A stretch of DNA of 64,000 bases from Octopus sinensis (Eukaryota). A program made the translations under genes and the position numbers. The notes under the pieces are model-generated. The model was not told the origin of the DNA. It searched no databases and saw only the letters and a program-made list of their open reading frames with translations. The DNA lies in contig NC_043000.1 of NCBI RefSeq assembly GCF_006345805.1, forward strand, positions 1,674,001 through 1,738,000. Reading direction: 5' to 3'. This document shows, in pieces, positions 2,861 to 58,713 of the stretch (positions are counted from its first letter, which is position 1; each line of letters begins with the position of its first letter).

Positions 2861-3047
2861 GAAGTATTAAGATCTTACGTTGACTTTCAATTCTTTCTCT
2901 GATTATTTCCCTTGAAAGCATGCTCATGGGTTCCACGTAACTTATGGCAGCGTTGCTGTTTCCAGAGTTTTATTTTCATTCCTCTATTATTAATTTTACT
3001 CGCGTCTTTATCACAGTACAAATCGATGGATAAAGAAATCAAACTAT

Positions 3048-3262
3048 ACTCTTTACTCTTTTACTCTTTTACTTGTTTCAGTCATTTGACTGCGGCCATG
3101 CTGGAGCACCGCCTTTTAGTCGAGCAAATCGACCCCGGGACTTATTCTTTGTAAGCCCAGTACTTATTCTATCAGTCTCTTTTGCTGAACCGCTAAGTAA
3201 CGGGGACGTAAACACACCAGCATCAGTTGTCAAGCAATGCTAGGGGGACAAACACAGACACA

Positions 3263-11880: not shown

Positions 11881-12973
11881 TGTGTATATATATATATATA
11901 TACTATCTGACGTACCCGGTAATTCCCGGAAAAGCGGGGCTACAAAGTATGTAGCCCTTAAAACGGTTTTTGTGCATTTACACAGGATCATGTTTTTAGA
12001 AATTCCCAATAAGTTATGAATACCCAAACTGTGAAGTCGCTTATATGTAATACCATGAAATTAGCTGCCCGATAATAACAATTCAAATAAAGTAGCCCCG
12101 AAATGGGCTTTAATGCATTCCCAGGGTATATAGAACATAGGAGGAAATACTAATAAGGTATGTATACTAAAATCATGAAGCATGTTACATAATAACAGGC
12201 TAATCAGACATGAGATAAAAACAATTCAAAGTAAATAACTCTGAAAAGGGCTTTTGTTCGTTCCCAGAGAATATTACCCTCATGGGCGCTAGTGTTGGTA
12301 TATTCGTGAATAAGTCACTGACCGAAATAAGTGGATCTATTGTTTAGGAAAATACTATTTACTTGTTTAAGGGTTGTACTGGATAAATTGTGAAAATAAC
12401 TCTAACAGTTCAAATACTAAGAAATATGCAATTCAATTTCATTTTTACCAAATAATTTAGGAAAATGAATGAGGTATTCCCTTGGCTATATATAAAGATC
12501 CCTTCCAGGAGAATGGGTTATTTCCTTTGATTTTTTAAATAAAATATATTAGATATATAAAAGGATCCCTTCCAGAGGCCTCATTATTGATTTTTCAACA
12601 ATCGAAGTATGCCATGATGTTTCCGGACATGAGTTCTACTCACATGTCACGTTTTATCAAGATCGATAAAACGATGTAGGAGGAGTCGGCCCGAGATTAT
12701 AGTAGAAGACACTTGCCCAAAGACCGACGAAGTGGGACTGAACCCAGAACCATGTGGTTGGGCAACAAGTTTCTTACCACACAGCCACGCCCACGCCTAT
12801 ATATCTGTGTGTGAGTGTGTGTGTGTGTGTGCGTGTGTGAGTGTGTGCGTGTGTATGTATATATACACATGTATTTATATGTATATATATATATGTATGT
12901 ATGTATTTGTACATGTATATGTACATATGTATATATGTATACATATACATACATATATGTATATATGTGTTTG

Positions 12974-13014: not shown

Positions 13015-13200
13015 CGGGAAGGTTTACGAAAATAAACAAAAGACGAAGGCAGGTGGAGTACAAACAAACAAATGTATTAGTATAGCGCTCAAGAATAGAA
13101 ATAGAACAAGTCTTTTATGTTTCGAGCCTACGCTCTTCGACAGAAAGATACGCTGAACAAAAAACAAGGAGAGAACAAAATGCGTGTAGGAGCTAACGAT
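12995..13200 (-). mobile_element. Short Penelope-like terminal repeat derivative with decayed minimal hammerhead (13112-13147)
   Basis: Minus strand cttt-CTGTCGA-a-GAG cgtagg CTC-GAAA-cata-aaag; homologous to 56470-56690. Confidence 0.55.
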
Positions 13201-13255
13201 ATGTGTGTGTGTGTGTATCCCTACCTCCCGGAAGTAAAGAATTACATTTGTCTTC

Positions 13256-13325
13256 GGCCTTAGAGTCTGACGAGAGCTTCGACGAAGCTAAGGCCTTTGC
13301 GGATGCGAAACCATTGGTCACTCTA
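13256..13325 (+). ncRNA. Type I hammerhead ribozyme candidate
   Basis: Stem I tagagt/actcta, core CTGACGA, G...C, GAAA, stem III acc-att-ggt, cleavage triplet GTC (C13319); ggcct/aggcc possible pseudoknot. Confidence 0.65.
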
Positions 13326-13370
13326 TGACCGAACATTAACTTAATTACTTTTTACGTGTGTGTGTGTATT

Positions 13371-13761
13371 TACTCTTTTTTTTTTTACTCTTTTACTTGT
13401 TTCAGTCATTTGACTGCGGCCATGCTGGAGCACCGCCTTTAGTCGAGCAAATCGACCCCGGGACTTATTCTCCGCAAGCCCAGTACTTATTCTATCGGTC
13501 TCCTTTGCCGAACGGCTAAGTGACGGGGACGTAAACACACCAGCAATGCTAGGAGGGCAAACACACACACATACACATATATATATATACATATATACGA
13601 CAGGCTTCTTTCAGTTTCCGTCTACCAAATCCACTCACAAGGCATCGGTCGGCCCGGGGCTATAGCAGAAGACACTTGCCCAAGGTGCCACGCAGTGGGA
13701 CTGAACCCGGAACCATGTGGTTGGTTAGCAAGCTACTTACCACACAGCCACTCCTGCGCCT
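13371..13761 (-). mobile_element. SINE-A
   Basis: Family A head and tail; head-to-head with the next copy. Confidence 0.9.
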
Positions 13762-13776
13762 ATATATATATATATA

Positions 13777-13849
<73 letters not shown>

Positions 13850-13855
13850 ATATAT

Positions 13856-14022
13856 GCGTAGGAGTGGCTGTGTGGTAAGTAGCTTGCTTACCAGCCACAT
13901 GGTTCCGGGTTCAGTCCCACTGCGTGGCACCTTGGGCAAGTGTCTTCTCTACTATAGCCTCGGGCGACCAAAGCCTTGTGAGTGGATTTGGTAGACAGAA
14001 ACTGAAAAAAGCCTGTCGTATA

Positions 14023-14390: not shown

Positions 14391-14804
14391 AGGAGTGGTG
14401 CTGTGTGGTAAGTAGCTTGCTTACGAACCACATGGTTCCAGGTTCAGTCCCACTGCGTGGCATCTTGGGCAAGTGTCTTCTGCTATAGCCCCGGGCTGAC
14501 CAATGCCTTGTGAGTGGATTTGGTGACGGAAACTGAAAGAAGCCCGTCGTATATATGTATATATATGTATATGTATGTGTGTGTGTTTGTGTGTATGTGT
14601 TTGTCCTCCTAGCATTGCTTGACAACCGATGCTGGTGTGTTTACGTCCCCGTCACTTAGCGGTTCGGCAAAAGAGACCGATAGAATAAGTACTGGGCTTA
14701 CAAAAGAATAAGTCCCGGGGTCAAGTTGCTCGATTAAAGGCGGTGCTCCAGCATGGCCGCAGTCAAATGACTGAAACAAGTAAAAGAGTAAAAGAGTAAA
14801 GAGT
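14387..14804 (+). mobile_element. SINE-A
   Basis: Family A head and (AAAGAGT)n tail. Confidence 0.9.
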
Positions 14805-15270
14805 ATACTGTGCGTGTGTGTGTGTGTGCATGCGCGTGTGCGTGCGTGTGTGCGTGTGTGTGTGTTATATATACGAGGAGCAGGGTATATTGCGTGGGTG
14901 GATGAGTATGCCTATGTTTACTGCTTGATTTTTTCCCCGTTCGTAGAAATTAAAAACCTTTTTGTGTACACACACAAGCCGAAGCAGCAGTAACCCACAT
15001 TATCAGCCACAGCAACAACCACACTGCTACCACGAGATCTGTTGTTTCCCAATACAGTCTGTTACGAAAGTTTGCCTTGACCTCTTTGCTATGTGATAAA
15101 CATTCTGTTTACCGGAACTTTCGTTAGAGCCACTCGTAATGATGTTAACTATTTATTATAGACTGATTCACCGAAATACTTACCTGTTTTTTTGCCTTCG
15201 ATGTGTCTGGGGAATATTTTTTTGTTTACAAACCGTATACATACTTGTATAAGTTGTAAATAAATATATA

Positions 15271-16910: not shown

Positions 16911-17690
16911 ATCTCGACTACTCTGGAGTCTTGAATAATCGTGTCCCCCACCTCCATTCCTGCTTATTAATTTTTCGGATTTTTTCCACACACACCTCGC
17001 TTTTATTCCAACCCCACCGCTTATTAATTTTTTCAGATTTTTTACCCCCCACTCCCGCTTTTATTCCAACTTACCCTCATATTAAATTTTGCTAATCTAT
17101 CTCCGGTGAAATTTTATTGTAAGTTATTCATATAAATACAACAGCTGGAGAATCTAATAATTTTATTTTACGTTAAGAACATTATATATGACTAAAAAAA
17201 AAGACTACAAGTAATACCATATGTTATAAAATAAATAGGATATATAAACTAAGTAACTAATACTAGTTTTAGAAAGAAATCAAAGATGACAGCCTAGAAA
17301 ATTTTAAATCAGGATTTCTCATTTAGACACAAGGCCAACAATTTGTGGGGAGGGACAAGTGGATTAAAGCGACTCAGTACATTACAGGTGCTTTATTTTA
17401 TCGACCCCGTAGGGATGAAAGATACAGCTAACCAGGCAGGATTGAATTCAGAATGTAATGGGCCATAACTTTATGCTGCAAGGCACGTTGCCCGATGCTT
17501 AGGCACAATGCCAGCAATTTAAAGGGAAGGGGAAAGTCGATTAAACTGGCTCCCGTTACTAGTACAAAGCGACAAACTCAGGGGAATGTATTATTATTTT
17601 GACTGACACAATTTTTGTGAATCAGCATGACAAAAAAAGAAAAGAAAAGAAAAAAAGCAAATGACAGGAATGGGAAGAAAACCCTGGAGT

Positions 17691-18095
17691 ACTCTTTTAC
17701 TCTTTTACTCCCTTTTACTTGTTTCAGTCATTTGACTGCGGCCATGCTGGAGCACCGCCTTTAGTCGAGCAAATCGACCCCGGGACTTATTCTTTGTAAG
17801 CCCAGTACTTATTCTATCGGTCTCATTTGCCGAACCGCTAAGTAACGGGGACGTAAACACACCAGCATCGGTTGTCAAGCAATGCTAGGGGGACAAACAC
17901 AGACACACAAACACACACACACACACACACATATATATACATATATACGACAGGCTTCTTTCAGTTTCCGTCTACCAAATCCACTCACAAGGCATTGGTC
18001 GGCCCGAGGCTATAGCAGAAGACACTTGCCCAAGATGAACCCAGAACCATGTGGTTGGTAGGCAAGCTACTTACCACACAGCCACTCTTGCGCCT
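17691..18095 (-). mobile_element. SINE-A with short deletion in the head
   Basis: Family A; gcccaagatg joins directly to aacccagaacc. Confidence 0.88.
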
Positions 18096-19784: not shown

Positions 19785-20982
19785 GGTACATGAGTTGCAC
19801 TGTTTATCCCATAAAGTAACAACGTCTGGCCTATTGTATCAACTGAGTAGAAATTTTTTTAATGAAATACATGACGTACAGGCAGAGCAGCGAGAAACTA
19901 AACAATAATGGGTGCTACTTTTCTGATTACTTTTGGTTAGTTTTAAGTGTCTTTACGTTGAAAGACATGCGGCCGCCAAACTTGTGTGATCTACGCGCTA
20001 ATTTTAATTATTATATTATTCATTCTTGGTTTCATATTATCATTCACTAACACATAAATAAAACATGGTTTTATTATTATTAAAATAGTAGCAAGTTTGA
20101 AAAAATACGTTTACAATGCTAAGTATATACAAAAGAATTTATTGTAAAAAATCTTTAGCCAACAGTTTAGGGCTTTTAGAAATTGAAAACTAAACTAAAA
20201 TGTAACCTAAAGTAATCGCCCTTTAAGTTGTAGATCACACGCCAAAGTAGCACCCAATAATGTACCTATTCATTTTCAGCTACTTCCGGCAGATTCGAAC
20301 GTGAATGCCTAATCGATGTTCTTTTTCGTTATCGGAATGTACCTTTTCCTTTTAGATGATATGCGTTTCATACCACACGCAGTTCACCGGTGAACGGTGA
20401 CTTTTCACTAATATGGTATTTCGTCTATATTGTGTGGACAGATAGATCTAGCAGGCTCTTGTTTATAGAATTTGGCAAAAAAATTACTTGCTGATGCCTA
20501 CTGATATCTGCCAAACAGATAATTATTCGTGAGGCTGCATGCAGAACCGCGGGAATTCAAACAATAACGTATCTGTTCATTCTCAATACGTTCTGACTGA
20601 TTCGAGTGCGAATATCTGATTGTTGTTGTCAATAACGAAGAGCCTGGACTCTTGTCAGATTCATCCGTCGTGTAGGGTTAACTTTAACTGAGGAGACACA
20701 CGAGGTCGAAACACCGTGGTATCTCAAAATCACCTTACACCGGTGAATCAAGTGTGTTATGAACACGTCAGCTAAAGGGAAGAGCTGTTCTTCGATGACG
20801 ATGGGGGTGAATGGATTACGCAGTTGTCCACTAATATATTTAAAGGTTCCAAGGTTCTGGTGTGTCTTCGGTATCGCCATCAAGACAATGCTATTCACGG
20901 ATAGCATTGTAGATGGTTTTAGAAACAATATTGTACCTCAAAAAGAGGTAGTATCTTTGGAGCATTTTTGGATAACTGATGA

Positions 20983-32265: not shown

Positions 32266-32414
32266 GCACACACACGCACGCACACACGAAAGCAAAGTAA
32301 TACAATCCGTGCCGAGATAGTGCCCCAACATTAAAGAAAGCATTTATCATCGCATTAATATTTAAAAGCTAACTTCTGGTACGCACGACATCTGTACGCG
32401 TTTGGTTTTCTTAC

Positions 32415-32488
<74 letters not shown>

Positions 32489-32559
32489 ATCTACCATTCT
32501 ATCTATCTATCTATATATCTATCTATCTATCCATATCTATCTATCTATCTTCTATTCCA

Positions 32560-32611
<52 letters not shown>

Positions 32612-35600
32612 CTTTCATTTGTGTGTTTTAAAGCACACACCCCAATAGAATCATGGTCAAGATTGGTGTGTGAATGCGCGTGGCTTGGGGTCTCCTTGAA
32701 ACAAGGATACCTCCTAAATGACATCAAGTCACATGATTTGGGAATCATAGCCATAAGTGAGACCAGACTCCACGAGCCACGGGCCCTAAAGTCCATGTTT
32801 GGCGGACAGTTTAACATTTATTTCGCTCCCTGTCTGCCGAGGATGGGCGGTAGTGGCACCGCAGTACTTTTTCACAAGAGCCTGGATCTCGAAGTCAAAA
32901 CGATTTCGTAGACCGGAGGGTAGACTGATCGTTCTGGATGTTGACGGCAGCAATGGGTGCGCTTTTCGACTCGTATCAGTCTACGCACCGCCCTTAACAG
33001 GTCGGGCGGATTTCTTTCGACGTCTAGAAGTATTCTTGGGAACGTCTCGTCCTTTACTCTTAGTGGGGGATTGGAATGCTACCTTGGACACGCATGTAGA
33101 CTACGTGGGTAGAGACAGAAACAGAAAGGGAGCAAATGCCTCAGAGACCTGCTCAGACGATTCCAACTGTCTGACAGGTACCGACTAAACCACCCAAATG
33201 CACCAACGTGGACATGGAGCAACCGCAGGGGTCGTCGAGATCGTATCTAGATAGGATACTGTGTAGGACAGTAGACAAGGATAACTTAGGATGTCCACAA
33301 TTCCACACAGTCAGCTACACGGATCACAAATTGGTGACGTGTACGCTAGACTTAGATAAGGCACATAGACAGGGTCCTGGGTACTGGAAACTGAACGCAT
33401 CATTCCCGTCCAGACAAGTTTTCAGAGACCGGATTAGCACACTAGTAAAGAGGGCTTTGACGGGAGCCATCATCAACAACAAATGGTGGTTTGCCCTCAA
33501 GAGAGCAGTAAAAGCAGAAGCGATTAGGTACAGCAAAGCACTAGCCATAGATAGAAATAGAGTAGAGGGTGAGCTAGTTAAGAAGCTAGAAGAGGCAATT
33601 AGAAGCGGCATCGCATCCGACGTTTTGGCGGCGAGGTTGGCCCTCGACCAACACTTCAACGCCAAACACGAAGGATGTGCTGTCAGAGCTAGGATGCGTG
33701 CTCTAAGGAACGAAGGGTTTGGAGCCGCGAGAGAGGCCCGGGTGGCAGAGGCGCAACAGGGCAACAAAGCCACCATTCGGTCACTGGTAGATGAACAGGG
33801 GCGCGAATTGCTCGAGCCAAGTAAAATGTGTGAGGCCTTTCAGCAGCATTTTGCCCGACTGTTCGGGACGAGTGGAGGGCAAGAACGTAGGGTAGACTTC
33901 AGTGCCTACCTACATAGCCTGCCACGACTCTCGACAAGAAAGGCAGGGTGCTGCGAAGGTGCCATCACACGGCGGCGGAAGTGCGGGAAGCGATGGCAGA
34001 ATGCTCGAGGGACAAATCACCGGGTTGGATGGTCTACCCTACGAATTTTACTATTGTATGCCAGACTTGTTTGGAGACGTCTTGGCAGCGGTATACTGCA
34101 ACTGGCAGCAAAACGGGAGCATACCCGGTTTTGTGAGTCGAGGAGCTGTAACTCTGCTGAAGAAAGATCCAAACAAGGGAAACATTATAGATAACTTTAG
34201 GCCAATCACTCTGCTCAATGCAGACCTGAAAATTTTGACAAAGGTGTTAGCCAAGAGGTTGGTGCTTGTATGGAGAAACTGGTCGACAACCCACAAACGT
34301 GCGCCGTGCCGGGCCGGAGCATCCATGACAACCTCCATCTGATGCGCTACATCATAGACAGGGTAGTTAACGAACCTGGCATGGGTGGGGCCCTGATCAA
34401 CTTGGATCAATCGAAAGCCTTTGATAGGGTAGACCATCGATACTTGGAGGCAGTCCTGAGAGCAGCTGGTTTCGGTCCCGTCTTCCGCGGCTGGATAGCT
34501 GCCTTGTACAGAGGCATCCGTTCGGTAATTCGCGTAAATGGACATCTATCGAGACCCTTCGACATTGCACGTTCGGTCCGTCAGGGATGCCCCCTCTCGG
34601 CGCTTCTATACGTATTGACCTTGAGCACTACTGCGGAAGCTGGCGACTCTGAGGGGCATCCCGCGAGAATTAGGATGCGGGACGAGCGTGTCTGCATACG
34701 CGGACGACGTCACCGTCATAGTGTCAAGCCACGAGCACATCGAGCGGGTCGGCGAGACACTGAAAGACTACGAAGCGGTGACAGGAGCAAAAATCAACCG
34801 GGAAAAGTCAGTGGGCTGCGGCTCGGCACCTGGAGAAGCAAGCCCATGCCGTCCACCAGTACCTCCGTCGTGGGACGCTGGACAGACGGCCCGGTTGAGT
34901 TGCTCGGGGTCTGGTTCGGTCCGGACCTCCAAATGGAGAAGAACTGGAACGAGATAACGAGTAGGGTGGTCACTCTCGCCCAGCATGGGCCGAGAGGAAA
35001 CTGTCCCTAAAAGGTCGGGCGGAGGTGGTGAACGCGTACATCGCGTCCATCATCTACTACCGCCTGACCGTCGTACCTTGTCCCGACCTACCATCACCAA
35101 ACTAGAACGCATCCTCTTCCGCTTCTTGTGGAAAGGATGCGTCCCGATGGTCAGGCGATCCATTTGCTGTCAACACCCGTTAAAAGGAGGGCTGGGCATG
35201 CCGTGGTTGATGATGCGCAGACACGCGCTGAGACTGCGACATCTCCGGCTCTATGTAGACGACGGTGAACAGGTGTGGTCGCCGTTTGTGAGGCACGCAT
35301 TCCCGCAACTCGTCTCCATGACCGAACTACAGTCGTGGATCAAAAAGAGGCCGAAGAAGGGCGAATGGCACCGCGAGTGTCGCGTTGCTCTCAAGCAACC
35401 TCTGCCGTCCCGGGTCGACCTTGAGTGACTTCAACACAACCAAAGCATTCTATAGGGATTAGTGGAGGGGAGGTACGACGACGAGCTCGGGGCAAACCTG
35501 GGCGTCGACGAGGAATACCTGACCCGCCTGTTTCAAACGACTTTCGGCCCGGGACCTATGGACAACTTCCAGAGATCCCTGGCCTGGCGGTGCTACCGAG

Positions 35601-36480
35601 AAGCGCTACCCGTTCGGGATAGCTCTATAGGCATGGCTCGAGAAACACGGGGCCGACCTGCCCGAGATGCGGGCAGAGCGACGAAACCGCTCTGCACGCA
35701 ATCGTGCAGTGTCCAGCAATTTCCCACCTGTGGGCTTATGTCGAACGACTGCTGTCACGTGTGGGACGTGTCGGTTTATCAGCCGAGTCTATCGTTAATA
35801 TCGTCACGCCTCCTTCCTTCAAACGGGAAGGAAGAGCTATTTTTATCATACTTGTGGCTATGGCGAAAGAATGTATCGGTGGACGCGTCTGAAAGGATTA
35901 GAGACAAACACTTTCCTCTCTGGTCAATCTCTCATCAACTTCTTCAAGTATCACTTGAAGAAAAAAGTGAGAGTAGAGAGGCAAGTTTTGTCTAGTGAAT
36001 GTTTTAAAAAAAGATGGGTGAATGTAGCAAGGATGGCACGTATGAATGACGAAGCCACCTTGACTATGATTCTATGAACCGTAAAAATTAATACAGAGAG
36101 TTGCTTATTTGCAAAAAAAAAAAAAAAAGAAATATAACATGTGACTTCATTGACCGAGGTTACCGTGGTCTTTTCCGTAGGCTTTTCTTTCCACGGGTAA
36201 ACCTCACCTGTCCTCCCCTTTACACTTCATATTGACATTTCTGTGATAACGATCCCTATTGATCAATTTTTTTTCCTCTCCCCCTTTTTTTTAACCCCCC
36301 TCTTTTTTGTCCTCTTTCTCTCCTTTTACGATCCCTTTTGATCGACCCCCCCTTTTTTATTTTATTTTATTTTTTATTTTAATATTTTTTATTATTTTTT
36401 TTTTTAAACCTTCAAAAGAAAAGCTCTACCTTGTAATTTGTTCTATCTGTGTGCAGCCCTGTGTGGCTAATAAAGAAACA
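32612..36480 (+). mobile_element. Tx1/L1-clade LINE, ORF2 plus 3' UTR, embedded in (TATC)n
   Basis: (TCTA)n ends at 32611; AATAAA at 36469-36474; (TATC)n resumes at 36481. Confidence 0.92.
32653..36077 (+). pseudogene. Frameshifted ORF2: APE endonuclease plus reverse transcriptase
   Basis: MVKIG..NARGL, IIAISETR, SVYAPP, LVGDWNA, YLDRI, YTDHK (APE); FRPITLLNADLKI, DQSKAFDRVDH, SVRQGCPLS, YADDVTV, KLSLKGRA (RT); split across many track ORFs. Confidence 0.92.
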
Positions 36481-36532
<52 letters not shown>

Positions 36533-52293: not shown

Positions 52294-53207
52294 AGAAAAA
52301 GTGAGAGGGGTACAGAGAACTTGCCGTGAGGAGTGGAATGTCCAACGTTTCGAATTCAATCCTTCGTCAGGGGTGGGGTAGAGAAAAAGAGAAGTTGAAG
52401 AAAGACAAACAGAGTTTACATCCTCTCAGCTTGAAAAACTGGCTGCAACTGATAATGGATATTATTATCAAGCCAGCCGACAAAGGGGGCGCCGTTGTTG
52501 TTTGGTGAGCTGATCTTTAGAGAAAAGAAACACTCCGCCAACTCTACGACTGCAGATACTACATGAAGATATCAAGTGATCCCACCAACCATTACCAGAG
52601 GAATGTTTGGACCTCTGTACATCAGCTGATCTCTTCTGGTTCACTGCCACCCCACTGTCACCAACCTCATTGTCACCACACCCCGAACTTCCACCATTTC
52701 GTCCCTAAAATACATAAACAAGATAATCCCGGCCGCCCTATTATCTCTTCTTGCAATTGCTCCACAGAACTTGTCGTTGCCCTACCTTCTCTAGGAAACG
52801 AAAGGAGCAACGTCTCATATTTGATCTTGGCACTATGTCCCAGATAGGTAGGAATGAACGTTTTTCCTTTCATCCTTTCCCCACTTCTTAATTCTTTTTT
52901 ACCCTTTTAAACCCTCCTTCCACCCTCTCTCTGCAACATTCCTGTATTTACTTACCTCTACTCTCTCCATTACCCTTTTCCTCCTCCTTTCTGCACGCTC
53001 TCTCCTATAACTTCTGTTTCACGTTAGCAGCCCGTGTTATTCTGCGTCCATTATCAGTTGCAACCAGTTTTTTCAAACTGAGAGGATGTAAACTCTGTTC
53101 GTCTTTCTTCAACTTCTCTTTTCTCTAACCCCCTGACGAAAGATTGAATCCGAAACGTTGGATATTCCACTCTTCACGGCAAGTTCACTGTACCCCTTTC
53201 TCTTTTT

Positions 53208-53246: not shown

Positions 53247-54550
53247 GGTGCGAGGGTAAATTGTTGCCATTTTATATTTTCAGTTTCGTGCATGTGCATT
53301 GTTTGTTTTTTGATTTTGTCGACTACGCAGTATAGTAGGGTCAGTTGGGCACCGTCTGTGAGAAAAACAACACCATGACACAATTCACTCTGCCAGAAAT
53401 TTGGAAACGATATGCTGTACTGCTTGGCATTCACGCCGGAAGCTCCAATACGAACATTTCAAAGTGTTTGGGTTTCAATCTGGGGATAGTACAATCTGAG
53501 TACATGTAGCGAGAGTGATTAAAAAGTCAACATCATGAAGTTTGGTGTGACCACTAGTGATGGCGACGTGGTCCCATTCATCTTCACACACGACCTCAGA
53601 CACAAAACTGAGGCCTACATCAATTGCCTGGAGGAGGTACCGCTGCCCTGAGTCAAGAGGGTGACTGCTGGAAGACCCTTATGTCTAGCAACAGGACTCT
53701 GCACCATACCACAGAAGCTGCCAGACAATTTCTGCGACCACATCACCCCTAACATCTGACCACCTAACTCCCCTGACTGCAACCCCCTTGGTTATTATGT
53801 GTGGGGCACAGTTGAACGAGAGACCAACAAATCCCCTCGTAATACCAAAGATGAAGTGAAGGTAAGGATTATGGCAGCATTCACCAACTTAAACAAGGAG
53901 ACTGTCCAGAAGAGTTGCAGGAGATTCCGAAGTCGTCTGGAGGCCGTGGTTGAAGCCAATGGCAATTTTATTGAATAAATTTATTCTTTAGTATTTCAAG
54001 ATATTTTTATGTAATTTTGATAAACATACGCAGGATAATAGGCGCAGGAGTGGTTGTGTGGTAAGTAGCTTGTTTACCAACCACATGGTTCCGGGTTCAG
54101 TCCCACTGCGTGGCATCTTGGGCAAGTGTCTTCTGCTATAGCCCCGGGCCGACCAATGCCTTGTGAGTGGATTTGGTAGACGGAAACTGAAAGAAGCCTG
54201 TCGTATATATGTATATATATATATATGTATGTGTGTGTTTGTGTGTCTGCTGTGTTTGTCCCCCTAGCATTGCTTGACAACCGATGCTGGTGTGTTTACG
54301 TCCCCGTCACTTAGCGGTTCGGCAAAAGAGACCGATAGAATAAGTACTGGGCTTACAAAGAATAAGTCCCGGGGTCGATTTGCTCGACTAAAGACGGTGC
54401 TCCAGCATGGCCGCAGTCAAATGACTGAAACAAGTAAAAGAGAAAAAGAGTAAAAGAGTAAAAGAGTAAAAGAGTATACCTGTTAAAATGAGATGCAGTG
54501 CTGTTTTCATTTTTGCGTAATTTAGACGACAGTTAATTCACCATACCCTG
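53244..54550 (+). mobile_element. Internally deleted DD37D/maT-like transposon, split by SINE-A
   Basis: TIRs (t)agggtgcgagggtaaattg / aattcaccataccctg-TA; SPDCNP..YYVWGTVERETNK...RLEAVVEANGNFIE*. Confidence 0.8.
54041..54476 (+). mobile_element. SINE-A
   Basis: Full length, (AAAGAGT)n tail. Confidence 0.92.
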
Positions 54551-54620
<70 letters not shown>

Positions 54621-54671
54621 TATCTATGTATGTATGTATGTATGTATGTATGCATGTATGTATATAAAAAA

Positions 54672-56814: not shown

Positions 56815-58076
56815 TGAGGCTGCACTCAAAAGTAAACGGAAGCATTTTCTGTGGGACAAGCCAGTTGTAGTTCAGGCTTCCGCCGCTAGAAACCATTTGA
56901 TGCGACCCTCAGGCATCAGTCTGCCAACTGGCGTCGTTGAATGAGGTCGTACTGAGGTCAAATGGTGCATCTTTATTTTGCACTGCTTCTCCCCTGTTCG
57001 TCGATTTTTGCGATGGCTGAAACGAAGGAACAGCGTTCTTCAATGAAATTCTGTATTCTGCTGGGGAAAACAGCGGCCGAAACAGTTGTCATGCTTCAGA
57101 CAGCTTACAAGGATGGTGTGATGTGTAAAACACAAGTCTATGAGTGGTTTCCACGTTTTAGGAATGGTAGCTTGTCACTTGAAGATCAACTTCAAACAGG
57201 ATGGCCATCGACCTCCCGAACGAATGAAAATGTCATGTAAATTCATGAACTGATCGTGGAGGACCGTCACCAAACAACTGACGAACTTGTTGATATGACT
57301 GGTGTGTCCTGAAGTTCCTGCCAACGAATTTTGAGCGAGGAATTGCGAATGAAAAAAAGCTGCAATAAAATTTGTGATTTGCTTGCTCACAGAAGATCCT
57401 TTTCTACCCTAGACATAAGGCCTGAAATTTTGGGGGAGGGAGCCAGTCGATGAGCTCGACCCCAGTACTTGACTGGTAATTTATCGATCCCGAAAGGACG
57501 AAAGGCAAAGTCGACCTCAGCGGAATTTGAACTCAGAACGTAAAGACAGACAAAATACCTGTTTCTTTACTACCCACAAGGGGCTAAACACAGAGGGGAC
57601 AAACAAGGACAGACATAAGTATTAAGTCGATTACATCGACCCCAGTGCGTAACTGGTACTTAATTTATCGACCCCGAAAGGATGAAAGGCAAAGTCGACC
57701 TCGGCGGAATTTGAACTCAGAACGTAACGGCAGACGAAATACGGCTACGCAAGATCAAAAGCAGTCATGACTGAATGCGTGTCGTGAACTGAAAGAACAG
57801 TGGAAAGTTGATCCTGACCGATAACGAAAACTGATGACGAAAGCTGAGGCTGTGGAATTTGCAGGTGTGGAAGAAGTAAAGAAAAAAATCAATAGAGTCG
57901 TTAAAAGACATCATTTCGCATGAGTTCCAGCACTGCTTCGAATAGTGGAAAATGCGCCTGGACCGATGCACCGCTTCAAATGAAGAATACTTTGAAAACG
58001 ATAAAAGAGTAAACATGTAAGACTAAGTGAATAAAATAATACTGCAAAATTCCGGTTTCTTTTGGGTACCCCTTCG
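56815..58076 (+). pseudogene. Internally deleted mariner transposon, split by a SINE-B2/B dimer (57400-57750)
   Basis: MAETKEQRSSMKFCILLGKTAAETVVMLQTAYKD...VYEWFPRFRNG; EFQHCFE*WKMRLDRC..SNEEYFEND; TIRs tgaggctgcactcaaaagtaaacggaa / ttccggtttcttttgggtaccccttcg, TA flanks. Confidence 0.85.
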
Positions 58077-58713
58077 TATGTAACAACAGACGACACATTA
58101 TCCATTCGTTGTTATACTGCAAAATTCCGGTTTCTTTTGGGTACCCCTTCGTATGTAACAACAGACGACACGTTATCCATTCGTTGTTATACTGCAAAAT
58201 TCCGGTTTCTTTTGGGTACCCCTTCGTATGTAACAACAGACGACACATTATCCATTCGTTGTTATACTGCAAAATTCCGGTTTCTTTTGGGTACCCCTTC
58301 GTATGTAACAACAGACGACACATTATCCATTCGTTGTTATACTGCAAAATTCCGGTTTCTTTTGGGTACCCCTTCGTATGTAACAACAGACGACACGTTA
58401 TCCATTCGTTGTTATACTGCAAAATTCCGGTTTCTTTTGGTACCCCTTCGTATGTAACAACAGACGACACGTTATCCATTCGTTGTTATACTGCAAAATT
58501 CCGGTTTCTTTTGGGTACCCCTTCGTATGTAACAACAGACGACACTTATCCATTCGTTGTTATACTGCAAAATTCCGGTTTCTTTTGAGTACCCCTTCGT
58601 ATGTAACAACAGACGACACATTATCCATTCGTTGTTATACTGCAAAATTCCGGTTTCTTTTGGGTACCCCTTCGTATGTAACAACAGACGACACATTATC
58701 CATTCGTTGTTAT
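58041..58713. repeat. 75-bp minisatellite x9 (mariner right end, TA and flank)
   Basis: Units start at 58041, 58116, 58191, 58266, 58341, 58416, 58490, 58564, 58639. Confidence 0.95.

What the first reader, a model, noticed from the sequence alone, without database searches (positions are those of the whole stretch)
13219..13355. Pseudoknotted type I hammerhead ribozyme in a 137-bp insert within (GT)n
Seen: every invariant core nucleotide is present (CTGACGA 13267-73, G13274/C13306, GAAA 13307-10, GTC 13317-19), with a 6-bp stem I (tagagt/actcta) and a 3-bp stem III. Stem II contains hairpin agcttc-gac-gaagct and aggcc, which can pair with ggcct just 5' of stem I (a possible loop II/stem I pseudoknot). 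Competing helices ggccttag/ctaaggcc and ggtca/tgacc could act as off states. The insert is flanked by gtgtgtgtgtgtat on both sides. Weak point: stem II has only one canonical pair at its base. Established: type I hammerheads define small non-LTR retrozymes in several metazoans. Inference: a retrozyme-like monomer distinct from the minimal PLE motifs.
Basis: partly seen in the sequence, partly recalled or inferred. Interest (0 to 1): 0.8.

Follow-up and report, generated by a model that had tools for sequence, protein, structure and literature searches.

The report
Interrupted hammerhead-like motif in a small insert
A 137-base insertion in a GT microsatellite of an animal genome (probably a cephalopod) carries what looks like a classic self-cutting hammerhead RNA, but 16 extra bases split one of its three stems, so it is most likely a lone, probably disabled relic of a mobile element and not a working retrozyme.

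Summary
It is rarer than chance for a single window. A stem-II-free hammerhead skeleton occurs once in the window and 0.006 times per shuffled window, or 0.0003 with an all-Watson-Crick stem I and the G10.1-C11.1 pair. A genome-wide scan of tens of thousands of windows would still yield some chance hits.

The motif has canonical metazoan type I features:
- a 6-bp helix I, an internal loop and a 5-bp closing stem;
- a short, near-palindromic helix III.

Helix II is interrupted. Removing 13290-13305 in silico gives a perfect 7-bp helix II and a near-optimal hammerhead fold. The same 16 nt build an 8-bp alternative helix that sequesters stem I (p about 0.003 for a random block).

Evidence against a working ribozyme or a retrozyme:
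- no Rfam hammerhead model, and no model I built from four validated animal hammerheads, recognises the motif;
- the catalytic fold is 11.8 kcal/mol above the optimum, against 3.1-7.4 in the controls;
- the unit is single-copy, not tandem, and I could retrieve no homologues. No eukaryotic genome collection was available.

Best reading (about 0.5): a solitary retro-inserted hammerhead-lineage copy, probably inactive or weakly active, and not a retrozyme array. Rivals are a chance resemblance (about 0.3) and an active pseudoknot or switch variant (about 0.15).

The parts
13205..13218 (+). Left copy of the 14-nt direct repeat GTGTGTGTGTGTAT (putative target-site duplication)
   Evidence: It is the end of a (TG)7TAT microsatellite.
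13219..13355 (+). 137-bp insert. Single copy in the window, GC 0.445.
   Evidence: no second copy by blastn; no tandem array. GC content.
13356..13369 (+). Right copy of the 14-nt direct repeat. A SINE-like repeat starts immediately after it, at about 13370.
   Evidence: In one search the ten SINE copies have unrelated 5' flanks, so the GT repeat is not part of the SINE.
13253..13257 (+). 5' strand of the closing stem (UUCGG), beyond internal loop 1 (13258-60 and 13326-28)
   Evidence: constrained fold; the background probability of such a closing stem is about 0.13-0.15.
13261..13266 (+). Helix I, 5' strand (UAGAGU)
13267..13273 (+). Core nucleotides C3-A9 (CUGACGA)
13274..13289 (+). G10.1 followed by the hairpin AGCUUC-GAC-GAAGCU. 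This is the 5' strand, loop and most of the 3' strand of a 7-bp helix II.
   Evidence: a 6-bp Watson-Crick hairpin within 2 nt of the core has background p of 0.0035-0.015.
13290..13305 (+). 16-nt block AAGGCCUUUGCGGAUG that interrupts helix II between positions 11.2 and 11.1.
   Evidence: removing it in silico restores a perfect helix II and a near-optimal hammerhead fold (gap 2.4 kcal/mol); p of about 0.003 that a random block gives at least 8 nt of complementarity to the 5' flank.
13306..13310 (+). C11.1 followed by G12, A13, A14 and A15.1 (CGAAA)
13310..13318 (+). Helix III, ACC-AUU-GGU. Three pairs and a triloop in the monomer. The sequence is near-palindromic, so it could form an 8-pair helix with one U-U mismatch in a dimer.
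13319..13319 (+). C17. The predicted cleavage site lies between 13319 and 13320.
   Evidence: Position in the motif. Cleavage was not tested.
13320..13325 (+). Helix I, 3' strand (ACUCUA)
13329..13333 (+). 3' strand of the closing stem (CCGAA)
13256..13295 (+). Competing stem-loop: GGCCUUAG 13256-63 pairs with CUAAGGCC 13288-95. It sequesters half of stem I, the first core strand and the base of the helix II hairpin, and it is part of the minimum-free-energy fold.
   Evidence: The helix alone is -11.7 kcal/mol.

Best explanation
The 137 bp are a solitary insertion of a small mobile or retro-transcribed element into a (GT)n microsatellite. The insertion duplicated 14 bp of the target.

On its + strand the insert carries a sequence descended from a metazoan type I hammerhead ribozyme:
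- a complete 15-nt core;
- a 6-bp helix I, an internal loop and a closing stem;
- a short near-palindromic helix III;
- a 7-bp helix II that a 16-nt block (13290-13305) splits after its first pair.

The block pairs with the 5' flank and stem I to form an 8-bp alternative helix. At equilibrium the RNA therefore sits in an inactive fold. At best, a transcript reading through the locus would be cut inefficiently after C13319, co-transcriptionally or as a dimer.

With a single ribozyme and no tandem partner, the locus cannot release unit-length or circular RNA. It is a dispersed 'solo' copy or relic of a hammerhead-bearing retroelement lineage (Penelope-like element pLTR or retrozyme), not a functioning retrozyme.

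Shown: the anatomy, the statistics, the energetics, and that the unit is single-copy and not tandem within the 64-kb window. Inferred: descent from a hammerhead family, the insertion mechanism, and low activity.
For: - The skeleton hit is unique in the window and rare in shuffles: 0.0063 per window, or 0.0003 with an all-Watson-Crick stem I plus G10.1-C11.1.
- The architecture matches four experimentally validated animal type I hammerheads taken from the supplement of PMC7229834. All four have a helix I of exactly 6 bp, a closing stem and a short helix III. It also matches the textual description of canonical metazoan hammerheads in PMC4209133.
- Removing 13290-13305 in silico gives a perfect 7-bp helix II. 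The optimal fold then has the hammerhead's stems I and II, and the full hammerhead fold is only 2.4 kcal/mol higher.
- The hairpin right next to the core has a background probability of 0.0035-0.015, and the G...C pair 0.04.
- The insert has clean boundaries with a 14-nt direct repeat. The repeat is not part of the neighbouring SINE.
- Penelope-like elements have a documented insertion bias for microsatellites (PMC8557442).
- The same window holds a Penelope-like element remnant with minimal hammerhead-like motifs, so this genome hosts such elements.
- Dispersed single hammerheads and 'solo' retrozyme monomers are documented (PMC4209133; preprint 10.64898/2026.07.22.740005).
Against: - No Rfam hammerhead family matches, even at E<=10 on 271 nt. 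My own model built from validated type I hammerheads gives at most 2 bits here.
- Helix II as it stands has one contiguous pair.
- The hammerhead fold is 11.8 kcal/mol above the optimum, against 3.1-7.4 in the controls. The equilibrium probability of stem I is 0.04.
- No second copy lies in 64 kb. No homologue turned up in metagenome, viral or prokaryotic DNA collections, or among 5.8 billion predicted proteins searched with six-frame peptides. These collections are poor in animal genomes, so this is weak evidence.
- Some of the features that support descent were noticed after the fact.
- Genome-wide, a handful of chance skeleton hits is expected.
- In this window the SINEs and the Penelope-like arm carry (AC)n at their own 3' ends. 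By analogy the insert's sense strand could be the minus strand, which would put the hammerhead on the antisense strand.
Confidence: 0.5

Rival explanations
1. Chance resemblance. The insert is an unrelated retro-copy. One possibility is a 5'-truncated 3' end of a non-LTR element or SINE transcribed from the minus strand, with an (AC)n tail, integrated into a matching microsatellite. On this reading the hammerhead core and stems on the + strand are coincidental and do nothing.
For: - No covariance model recognises the motif.
- The one independent structural test, a contiguous helix II, fails.
- The hammerhead fold is strongly disfavoured.
- No homologues were found.
- The per-window chance rate of 0.0003-0.006 implies roughly 10 to 250 such sites in a genome of a few gigabases, so a genome-wide scan will surface some.
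- Retroelements in this window end in (AC)n on their sense strand. For this insert that would be the minus strand.
Against: - Several extra features coincide, each uncommon by chance: the G-C pair (0.04), a perfect 6-bp hairpin abutting the core (0.0035-0.015) and a closing stem (about 0.14). Helix III is also near-palindromic.
- Excising one contiguous 16-nt block yields a textbook hammerhead.
- Multiplied together, the chance expectation falls well below one per genome. Part of this reasoning is post hoc.
- The insert has no similarity to the LINE or SINE 3' ends in the window.
Confidence: 0.3
2. An active, atypical type I hammerhead. Helix II would consist of the G13274-C13306 pair and a stacked hairpin. 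The 16-nt bulge would pair through AGGCC 13291-95 with GGCCU 13256-60 as a stem I / stem II pseudoknot, or it would toggle with the 8-bp off-state helix as a built-in conformational switch. The RNA would then cleave itself after C13319.
For: - About 40% of natural hammerheads are predicted to use a stem I / stem II pseudoknot. One with a single-pair stem II cleaves at more than 1.2 per min in 0.5 mM Mg2+ (PMC3088659).
- The block's complementarity to the 5' flank is non-random: p of about 0.003 for at least 8 nt and about 0.06 for at least 6 nt.
- All core nucleotides are intact.
Against: - The nested hammerhead state with the hairpin is -5.2 kcal/mol. Adding about -7.5 for the 5-bp duplex still leaves it roughly 15 kcal/mol above the optimum of -28.2 (rough estimate).
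- Only one nucleotide (A13290) links the base of helix II to the first pseudoknot pair, which sits at the far end of a 6-bp stem I. That looks sterically strained. This is an inference from the known hammerhead fold and was not modelled.
- The pseudoknot competes with the closing stem for G13256 and G13257.
- There is no covariation evidence, because there are no homologues.
Confidence: 0.15

Closest known systems
Canonical metazoan type I hammerhead ribozymes (Rfam RF00163 class; coral, mussel and axolotl retrozyme hammerheads, PMC7229834; description in PMC4209133)
   Same: Stem I is the open helix. The core is CUGANGA / GAAAC / GUC. Helix I is exactly 6 bp, followed by an internal loop and a closing stem. 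Helix III is 2 pairs beyond A15.1-U16.1 with a small, near-palindromic cap. G10.1-C11.1 is present.
   Different: The spacer between CUGANGA and GAAA is 33 nt, against 13-14 nt in the four validated examples. Helix II is interrupted by a 16-nt bulge after its first pair. The conserved loop 1 / loop 2 tertiary contacts are not recognisable. No covariance model recognises the motif. The catalytic fold is far less favourable than in the controls.
Animal non-LTR retrozymes and their 'solo' monomers (PMC7229834; preprint 10.64898/2026.07.22.740005)
   Same: A small non-coding unit with a type I hammerhead-like motif and GC of 0.445, just within the <45% quoted for retrozymes (PMC7229834). Dispersed solo monomers are a described category. 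The host genome also carries Penelope-like elements.
   Different: There is no tandem repeat. At 137 bp the unit is shorter than the reported 150-450 bp. As a circle it would be only 54% paired, with z of -1.7, so it is not a highly self-paired rod. No family or circular RNA evidence is available.
Minimal hammerheads in the pLTRs of Penelope-like elements (PMC4209133; PMC8557442)
   Same: A long helix II (6-8 bp) next to the core. The motif sits a few tens of nucleotides from the element's 3' end. The element is inserted in a microsatellite. Such motifs mostly occur as single, dispersed copies from truncated elements.
   Different: This motif has a real helix III hairpin and a 6-bp helix I. 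It shows no sequence similarity to the Penelope-like remnant in the window (52296-53207) beyond the core. No RT or endonuclease ORF and no pLTR lies nearby.
Pseudoknot-stabilised hammerheads, including one with a single-pair stem II (PMC3088659)
   Same: A single canonical pair at the base of stem II, together with a 5-bp complementarity that could link the stem II region to the stem I flank.
   Different: The validated case is a type II hammerhead with short loops and finely tuned spacing. Here the pairing segment lies in a 16-nt bulge one nucleotide from the core-proximal end of helix II, and the same nucleotides form a stronger competing helix.

Membership tests
Hammerhead ribozyme (type I) | Conserved catalytic core: C3-U4-G5-A6-N7-G8-A9, G12-A13-A14, the A15.1-U16.1 pair, and H17 | tested here: met
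   CTGACGA 13267-73, GAAA 13307-10, A13310-T13318 and C13319.
Hammerhead ribozyme (type I) | Helix I (open) and helix III (closed) flank the cleavage site | tested here: met
   Six Watson-Crick pairs in helix I and three pairs plus a triloop in helix III. It is the only such site in the window. Shuffles give 0.0063 per window.
Hammerhead ribozyme (type I) | A contiguous helix II closing the core at 10.1-11.1 (usually at least 2 pairs; 4 pairs in canonical animal motifs) | tested here: not met
   There is one contiguous pair, G13274-C13306. A 16-nt bulge then separates it from a 6-bp hairpin. The spacer is 33 nt, against 13-14 nt in four validated controls.
Hammerhead ribozyme (type I) | Recognition by covariance models of the family | tested here: not met
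   Rfam gave no hit at gathering score on the window and none at E<=10 on 13150-13420. On the whole window at E<=10, no hammerhead family was among the 150 listed matches; 31 lower-scoring ones were not shown. My own model R1, built from four validated type I hammerheads, gave at most 2 bits. Caveat: minimal hammerheads of Penelope-like elements are also missed, so these tests are insensitive to non-canonical members.
Hammerhead ribozyme (type I) | The catalytic fold is energetically accessible | tested here: inconclusive
   The gap to the optimal fold is 11.8 kcal/mol, against 3.6, 7.4, 3.1 and 6.4 in the controls. Stem I has probability 0.04. Nearest-neighbour models ignore tertiary contacts and co-transcriptional folding.
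Hammerhead ribozyme (type I) | Conservation of the core and covariation of the stems among homologues | tested here: inconclusive
   No homologue could be retrieved in the window, in metagenome contigs (11 unrelated pattern matches), in viral contigs, in prokaryotic genomes or in the protein database searched with six-frame peptides. No animal genome collection was available.
Hammerhead ribozyme (type I) | Site-specific self-cleavage in Mg2+ | not testable with these tools
   This needs an in vitro transcription and cleavage assay.
Animal non-LTR retrozyme | Tandem repeats (dimer to multimer) of a 150-450 bp unit, each with a type I hammerhead | tested here: not met
   One copy of 137 bp. There is no tandem array and no second copy in 64 kb. 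The definitions come from PMC7229834 and the 2026 preprint.
Animal non-LTR retrozyme | Expression as small, highly self-paired circular RNA | not testable with these tools
   The only proxy available is a circular fold, which is 54% paired with z of -1.7. No transcriptome data were available.
Penelope-like element pLTR with hammerhead | Sequence continuity with a pLTR or with an RT/GIY-YIG ORF of a Penelope-like element | tested here: not met
   No similarity to the Penelope-like remnant at 52296-53207, and no such ORF near 13.2 kb. Other families of these elements in the genome could not be searched.
Penelope-like element pLTR with hammerhead | Insertion into a microsatellite target | tested here: met
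   The insert sits in (GT)n with a 14-nt direct repeat. The bias is described in PMC8557442. This feature is not specific to these elements.

The most novel reading that the evidence does not exclude
A natural type I hammerhead family whose helix II carries a conserved 16-nt bulge acting as a built-in conformational switch. In one state the bulge forms an 8-bp helix that sequesters stem I and the first core strand. In the other state it clamps stem I and stem II through a 5-bp pseudoknot and allows cleavage. This would be a self-regulating hammerhead in a cephalopod-type mobile element.
Probability: 0.12. Interest if true: 0.6.

Novelty: new member of a known kind. Interest (0 to 1): 0.3.

Why it matters
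If the motif descends from a hammerhead family, it documents type I hammerhead-bearing mobile elements other than the minimal Penelope-type motifs in this probably cephalopod genome. My literature searches found no description of hammerheads specifically in cephalopods.

It would also give a natural example of how a single small insertion in helix II converts a textbook ribozyme into an RNA locked in an alternative fold.

If the interrupted form is conserved and active, it would be a natural switchable hammerhead. That would interest ribozyme structural biology and people who engineer ribozymes.

If it is a chance match or a dead solo copy, it is ordinary genomic debris. It then serves mainly as a caution that core plus two stems is not enough to call a hammerhead.

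Tried and rejected
- Rfam. Gathering thresholds on the whole window gave nothing. E<=10 on 271 nt around the motif gave nothing. E<=10 on the whole window gave only microsatellite-driven 'miRNA' noise.
- Own covariance model R1. I built it from four experimentally validated animal type I hammerheads taken from the supplement of PMC7229834. The candidate is not aligned as a hammerhead and scores at most 2 bits. The model's best window hit is a different core-like site at 20687-20722, which has no stem I.
- DNA homologue searches:
  - blastn of the insert against the window found self only;
  - a gapped exact pattern in metagenome contigs found 11 matches, all unrelated sequences;
  - a 23-mer found 0 matches in viral contigs and 0 in prokaryotic genomes.
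- Protein-route homologue searches. Concatenated six-frame peptides of the insert against 5.8 billion proteins gave no hit. Exact look-ups of the two ORFs spanning the insert, and of two LINE ORFs, were not on record.
- Species identification through TE proteins gave no species-level match. The LINE RT is 80% identical to an unnamed ENA contig (ERZ23872315) and 42% identical to a protein of the cuttlefish Acanthosepion pharaonis. The Penelope-like fragment is at most 56% identical to unnamed ENA proteins.
- tRNA-like (SINE head) origin: ARAGORN found nothing.
- Tandem organisation: TRF found none for the insert.
- Full circular monomer: the circular fold is only 54% paired, with z of -1.7, so there is no support for a rod-like retrozyme circle.
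- An alternative irregular helix II (13278-87 with 13295-13303, with bulges) is the best nested hammerhead-compatible fold, but it is still 11.8 kcal/mol above the optimum.

Full report
**Observation**

- Stem I is UAGAGU 13261-66 paired with ACUCUA 13320-25.
- The core is CUGACGA 13267-73, G13274 ... C13306 and GAAA 13307-10.
- Stem III is ACC/GGU with an AUU loop, 13310-18.
- C17 is 13319.
- The hairpin AGCUUC-GAC-GAAGCU occupies 13275-89.
- AGGCC 13291-95 is complementary to GGCCU 13256-60.
- The competing helices are GGCCUUAG 13256-63 with CUAAGGCC 13288-95, and GGUCA with UGACC.
- The 137 bp (13219-13355) lie between two copies of GTGTGTGTGTGTAT (13205-18 and 13356-69).

The neighbouring SINE-like repeat has ten copies in the window and starts at about 13370. 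Its copies have unrelated 5' flanks, so the GT repeat is not part of it. The 14-mer occurs only four times on the + strand of the window. Two copies 151 nt apart therefore look like a target-site duplication (p about 0.02), although microsatellites do cluster.

**Is it more than chance?**

I wrote a descriptor that asks for everything except stem II. It hits only this site in the window. In 3000 dinucleotide-preserving shuffles it gave 19 hits (0.0063 per window). Only one of those had both an all-Watson-Crick stem I and G10.1-C11.1. For one window that is significant. Across a genome of tens of thousands of windows, tens to hundreds of chance skeleton matches are still expected. The decision therefore rests on features that were not used to find the motif.

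**Features that favour hammerhead ancestry**

- Beyond the 6-bp helix I there is a 3x3 internal loop and a 5-bp closing stem, UUCGG 13253-57 with CCGAA 13329-33. Its background probability is about 0.14.
- Helix III, ACCAUUGGU, is a near-palindrome. PMC4209133 describes this as typical of metazoan type I hammerheads that act as dimers.
- Four experimentally validated animal hammerheads from the supplement of PMC7229834 all have a helix I of exactly 6 bp, a closing stem and a short helix III.
- Most telling, removing the 16 nt at 13290-13305 in silico leaves G-AGCUUC-GAC-GAAGCU-C, a perfect 7-bp helix II. The optimal fold then has the hammerhead's stems, and the full catalytic fold is only 2.4 kcal/mol above it. 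A 6-bp Watson-Crick hairpin abutting the core has a background probability of 0.0035-0.015, and the G...C pair 0.04.

The locus therefore reads as a textbook type I hammerhead with one contiguous block inserted in the 3' strand of helix II. Part of this argument is post hoc, and I have discounted it accordingly.

**Features that count against a working ribozyme**

- Helix II as it stands has one contiguous pair. The CUGANGA-to-GAAA spacer is 33 nt, against 13-14 nt in the four controls.
- Rfam gives nothing at gathering score and nothing at E<=10 on 271 nt. Its whole-window list at E<=10 is microsatellite noise.
- A covariance model built from the four validated hammerheads does not align the candidate at all. 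These models also miss the minimal hammerheads of Penelope-like elements, both in the window and in locus L013. They are therefore insensitive to non-canonical members, and their silence is not a refutation.
- The best nested hammerhead-compatible fold of 13250-13335 is -16.4 kcal/mol, against an optimum of -28.2. That gap of 11.8 compares with 3.6, 7.4, 3.1 and 6.4 in the controls. Stem I has an equilibrium probability of 0.04.

**The 16-nt block is not random**

Together with the two preceding nucleotides, the block forms 8 nt of perfect complementarity to the 5' flank and stem I. A random block does this with p of about 0.003. There are three possible explanations:
- selection for an inactive resting fold, as in viroid-like and retrozyme RNAs;
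- a functional pseudoknot or switch;
- a templated inverted duplication.

A pseudoknot combined with a single-pair stem II has an active precedent (PMC3088659). Here, however, only one nucleotide links the base of helix II to the first pseudoknot pair at the far end of a 6-bp stem I. I judge this sterically strained. That is an inference, not a model.

**Is it a retrozyme?**

No, by definition. Animal non-LTR retrozymes are tandem repeats of 150-450 bp, each with a type I hammerhead, expressed as highly self-paired circles (PMC7229834; the 2026 preprint). This unit is 137 bp, single-copy in 64 kb and not tandem. As a circle it would be only 54% paired, with z of -1.7. One hammerhead gives one cut and releases no unit.

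The documented categories that fit are 'solo' monomers and the dispersed single hammerheads left by truncated Penelope-like elements. Those elements also prefer microsatellite targets (PMC8557442).

The window itself contains such a remnant. Inverted arms lie at 52296-52438 and 53069-53207, and each carries CTGACGAA...GAAACGTT. They flank a stop-riddled RT-like fragment of a Penelope-like element and abut (AC)n. The insert shows no sequence similarity to this remnant beyond the core.

**Homologues and organism**

No copy of the insert was found in:
- the window;
- metagenome contigs, where 11 matches were all unrelated sequences;
- viral contigs;
- prokaryotic genomes;
- 5.8 billion predicted proteins, searched with six-frame peptides.

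Exact ORF look-ups also failed. None of these collections represents animal genomes well, so this is weak evidence.

The closest named relative of the window's LINE reverse transcriptase is from the cuttlefish Acanthosepion pharaonis, at 42% identity. An unnamed ENA contig is 80% identical. The host is probably a cephalopod mollusc, but this is not proven. My literature searches found no description of hammerheads specifically in cephalopods.

**Caveat on orientation**

The SINEs and the Penelope-like arm in this window carry (AC)n at the 3' end of their own sense strand. The LINE at 32.4-36.5 kb instead ends in (ATCT)n. If the insert follows the (AC)n pattern, its RNA strand would be the minus strand and the hammerhead would be antisense. 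That favours the chance reading. Only other copies or an empty site can settle it.

**Verdict**

| Reading | Probability |
|---|---|
| Solitary retro-inserted copy from a type I hammerhead lineage, helix II split by a 16-nt block that also locks the RNA in an alternative fold; probably inactive or weakly active, not a retrozyme | about 0.5 |
| Chance resemblance inside an unrelated retro-copy | about 0.3 |

Interest is modest unless the interrupted form proves to be conserved and active.

Noticed in passing
window 52296-53207 (arms 52296-52438 on the minus strand and 53069-53207 on the plus strand; ORF fragment 52431-52838): Remnant of a Penelope-like element. Two inverted arms of about 140 nt are 91-96% complementary. 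Each holds a minimal hammerhead-like motif, CTGACGAA-(4-bp helix II)-GAAACGTT. They flank an RT-like N-terminal fragment with stop codons (IIKPADKGGAVVVW ... PKIHK ... PGRPIIS). The outer ends abut (AC)n and (ACAT)n microsatellites. Rfam does not detect these motifs. The best protein relatives are 56% identical and carry PF28514/DUF8422.
   Followed up: partly
window 20687-20722 (+): CTGAGGAGACACACGAGGTCGAAACACCGTGGTA is the best window hit of my type I hammerhead model (17.2 bits, E about 0.013). It has a core and a partial helix II, but no stem I can be drawn from the flanks. It is probably a decayed or chance motif.
   Followed up: partly
L013 9554-9596 (-) and 9968-10010 (+): In an ENA contig that carries the closest relative of the window's Penelope-like fragment, an inverted pair of minimal hammerhead-like motifs (CUGAUGA ... 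GAAACGUU) lies about 3 kb downstream of the DUF8422 gene. Each scores only 8.1 bits with my model, and Rfam does not report them.
   Followed up: no
window 13370-13545, plus nine other copies (for example 3047-3222, 14630-14805, 17690-17867, 54285-54462): An abundant SINE-like repeat of about 178 bp. It starts with (TACTCTT)n and ends in a (CA)n-rich tail. It is often followed by a second conserved module (ACAGGCTTCTTTCAGTTTCCGTC...). The copies are 90-96% identical (one diverged copy about 80%).
   Followed up: partly
window about 32400-36500 (+): A degenerate non-LTR retrotransposon with Exo_endo_phos-like and RVT_1 domains split over several frames. It ends in AATAAAGAAACAT followed by an (ATCT)n tail. 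The closest named RT is from the cuttlefish Acanthosepion pharaonis at 42% identity.
   Followed up: partly
window about 57976-58600: A tandem repeat of about 99 bp that stays open in several reading frames. The repeated peptide is ...GYPKETGILQYNNEWI.CRLLLHTK.... It looks like a minisatellite and not a gene.
   Followed up: no
window-wide (for example 12889-12957, 54580-54663, 13716-13900): All sub-threshold Rfam 'miRNA' and 'snoRNA' matches (mir-297, mir-3149, MIR4208, sno_ZL1 and others) fall on TA/GT/CA microsatellites. They are low-complexity artefacts.
   Followed up: yes
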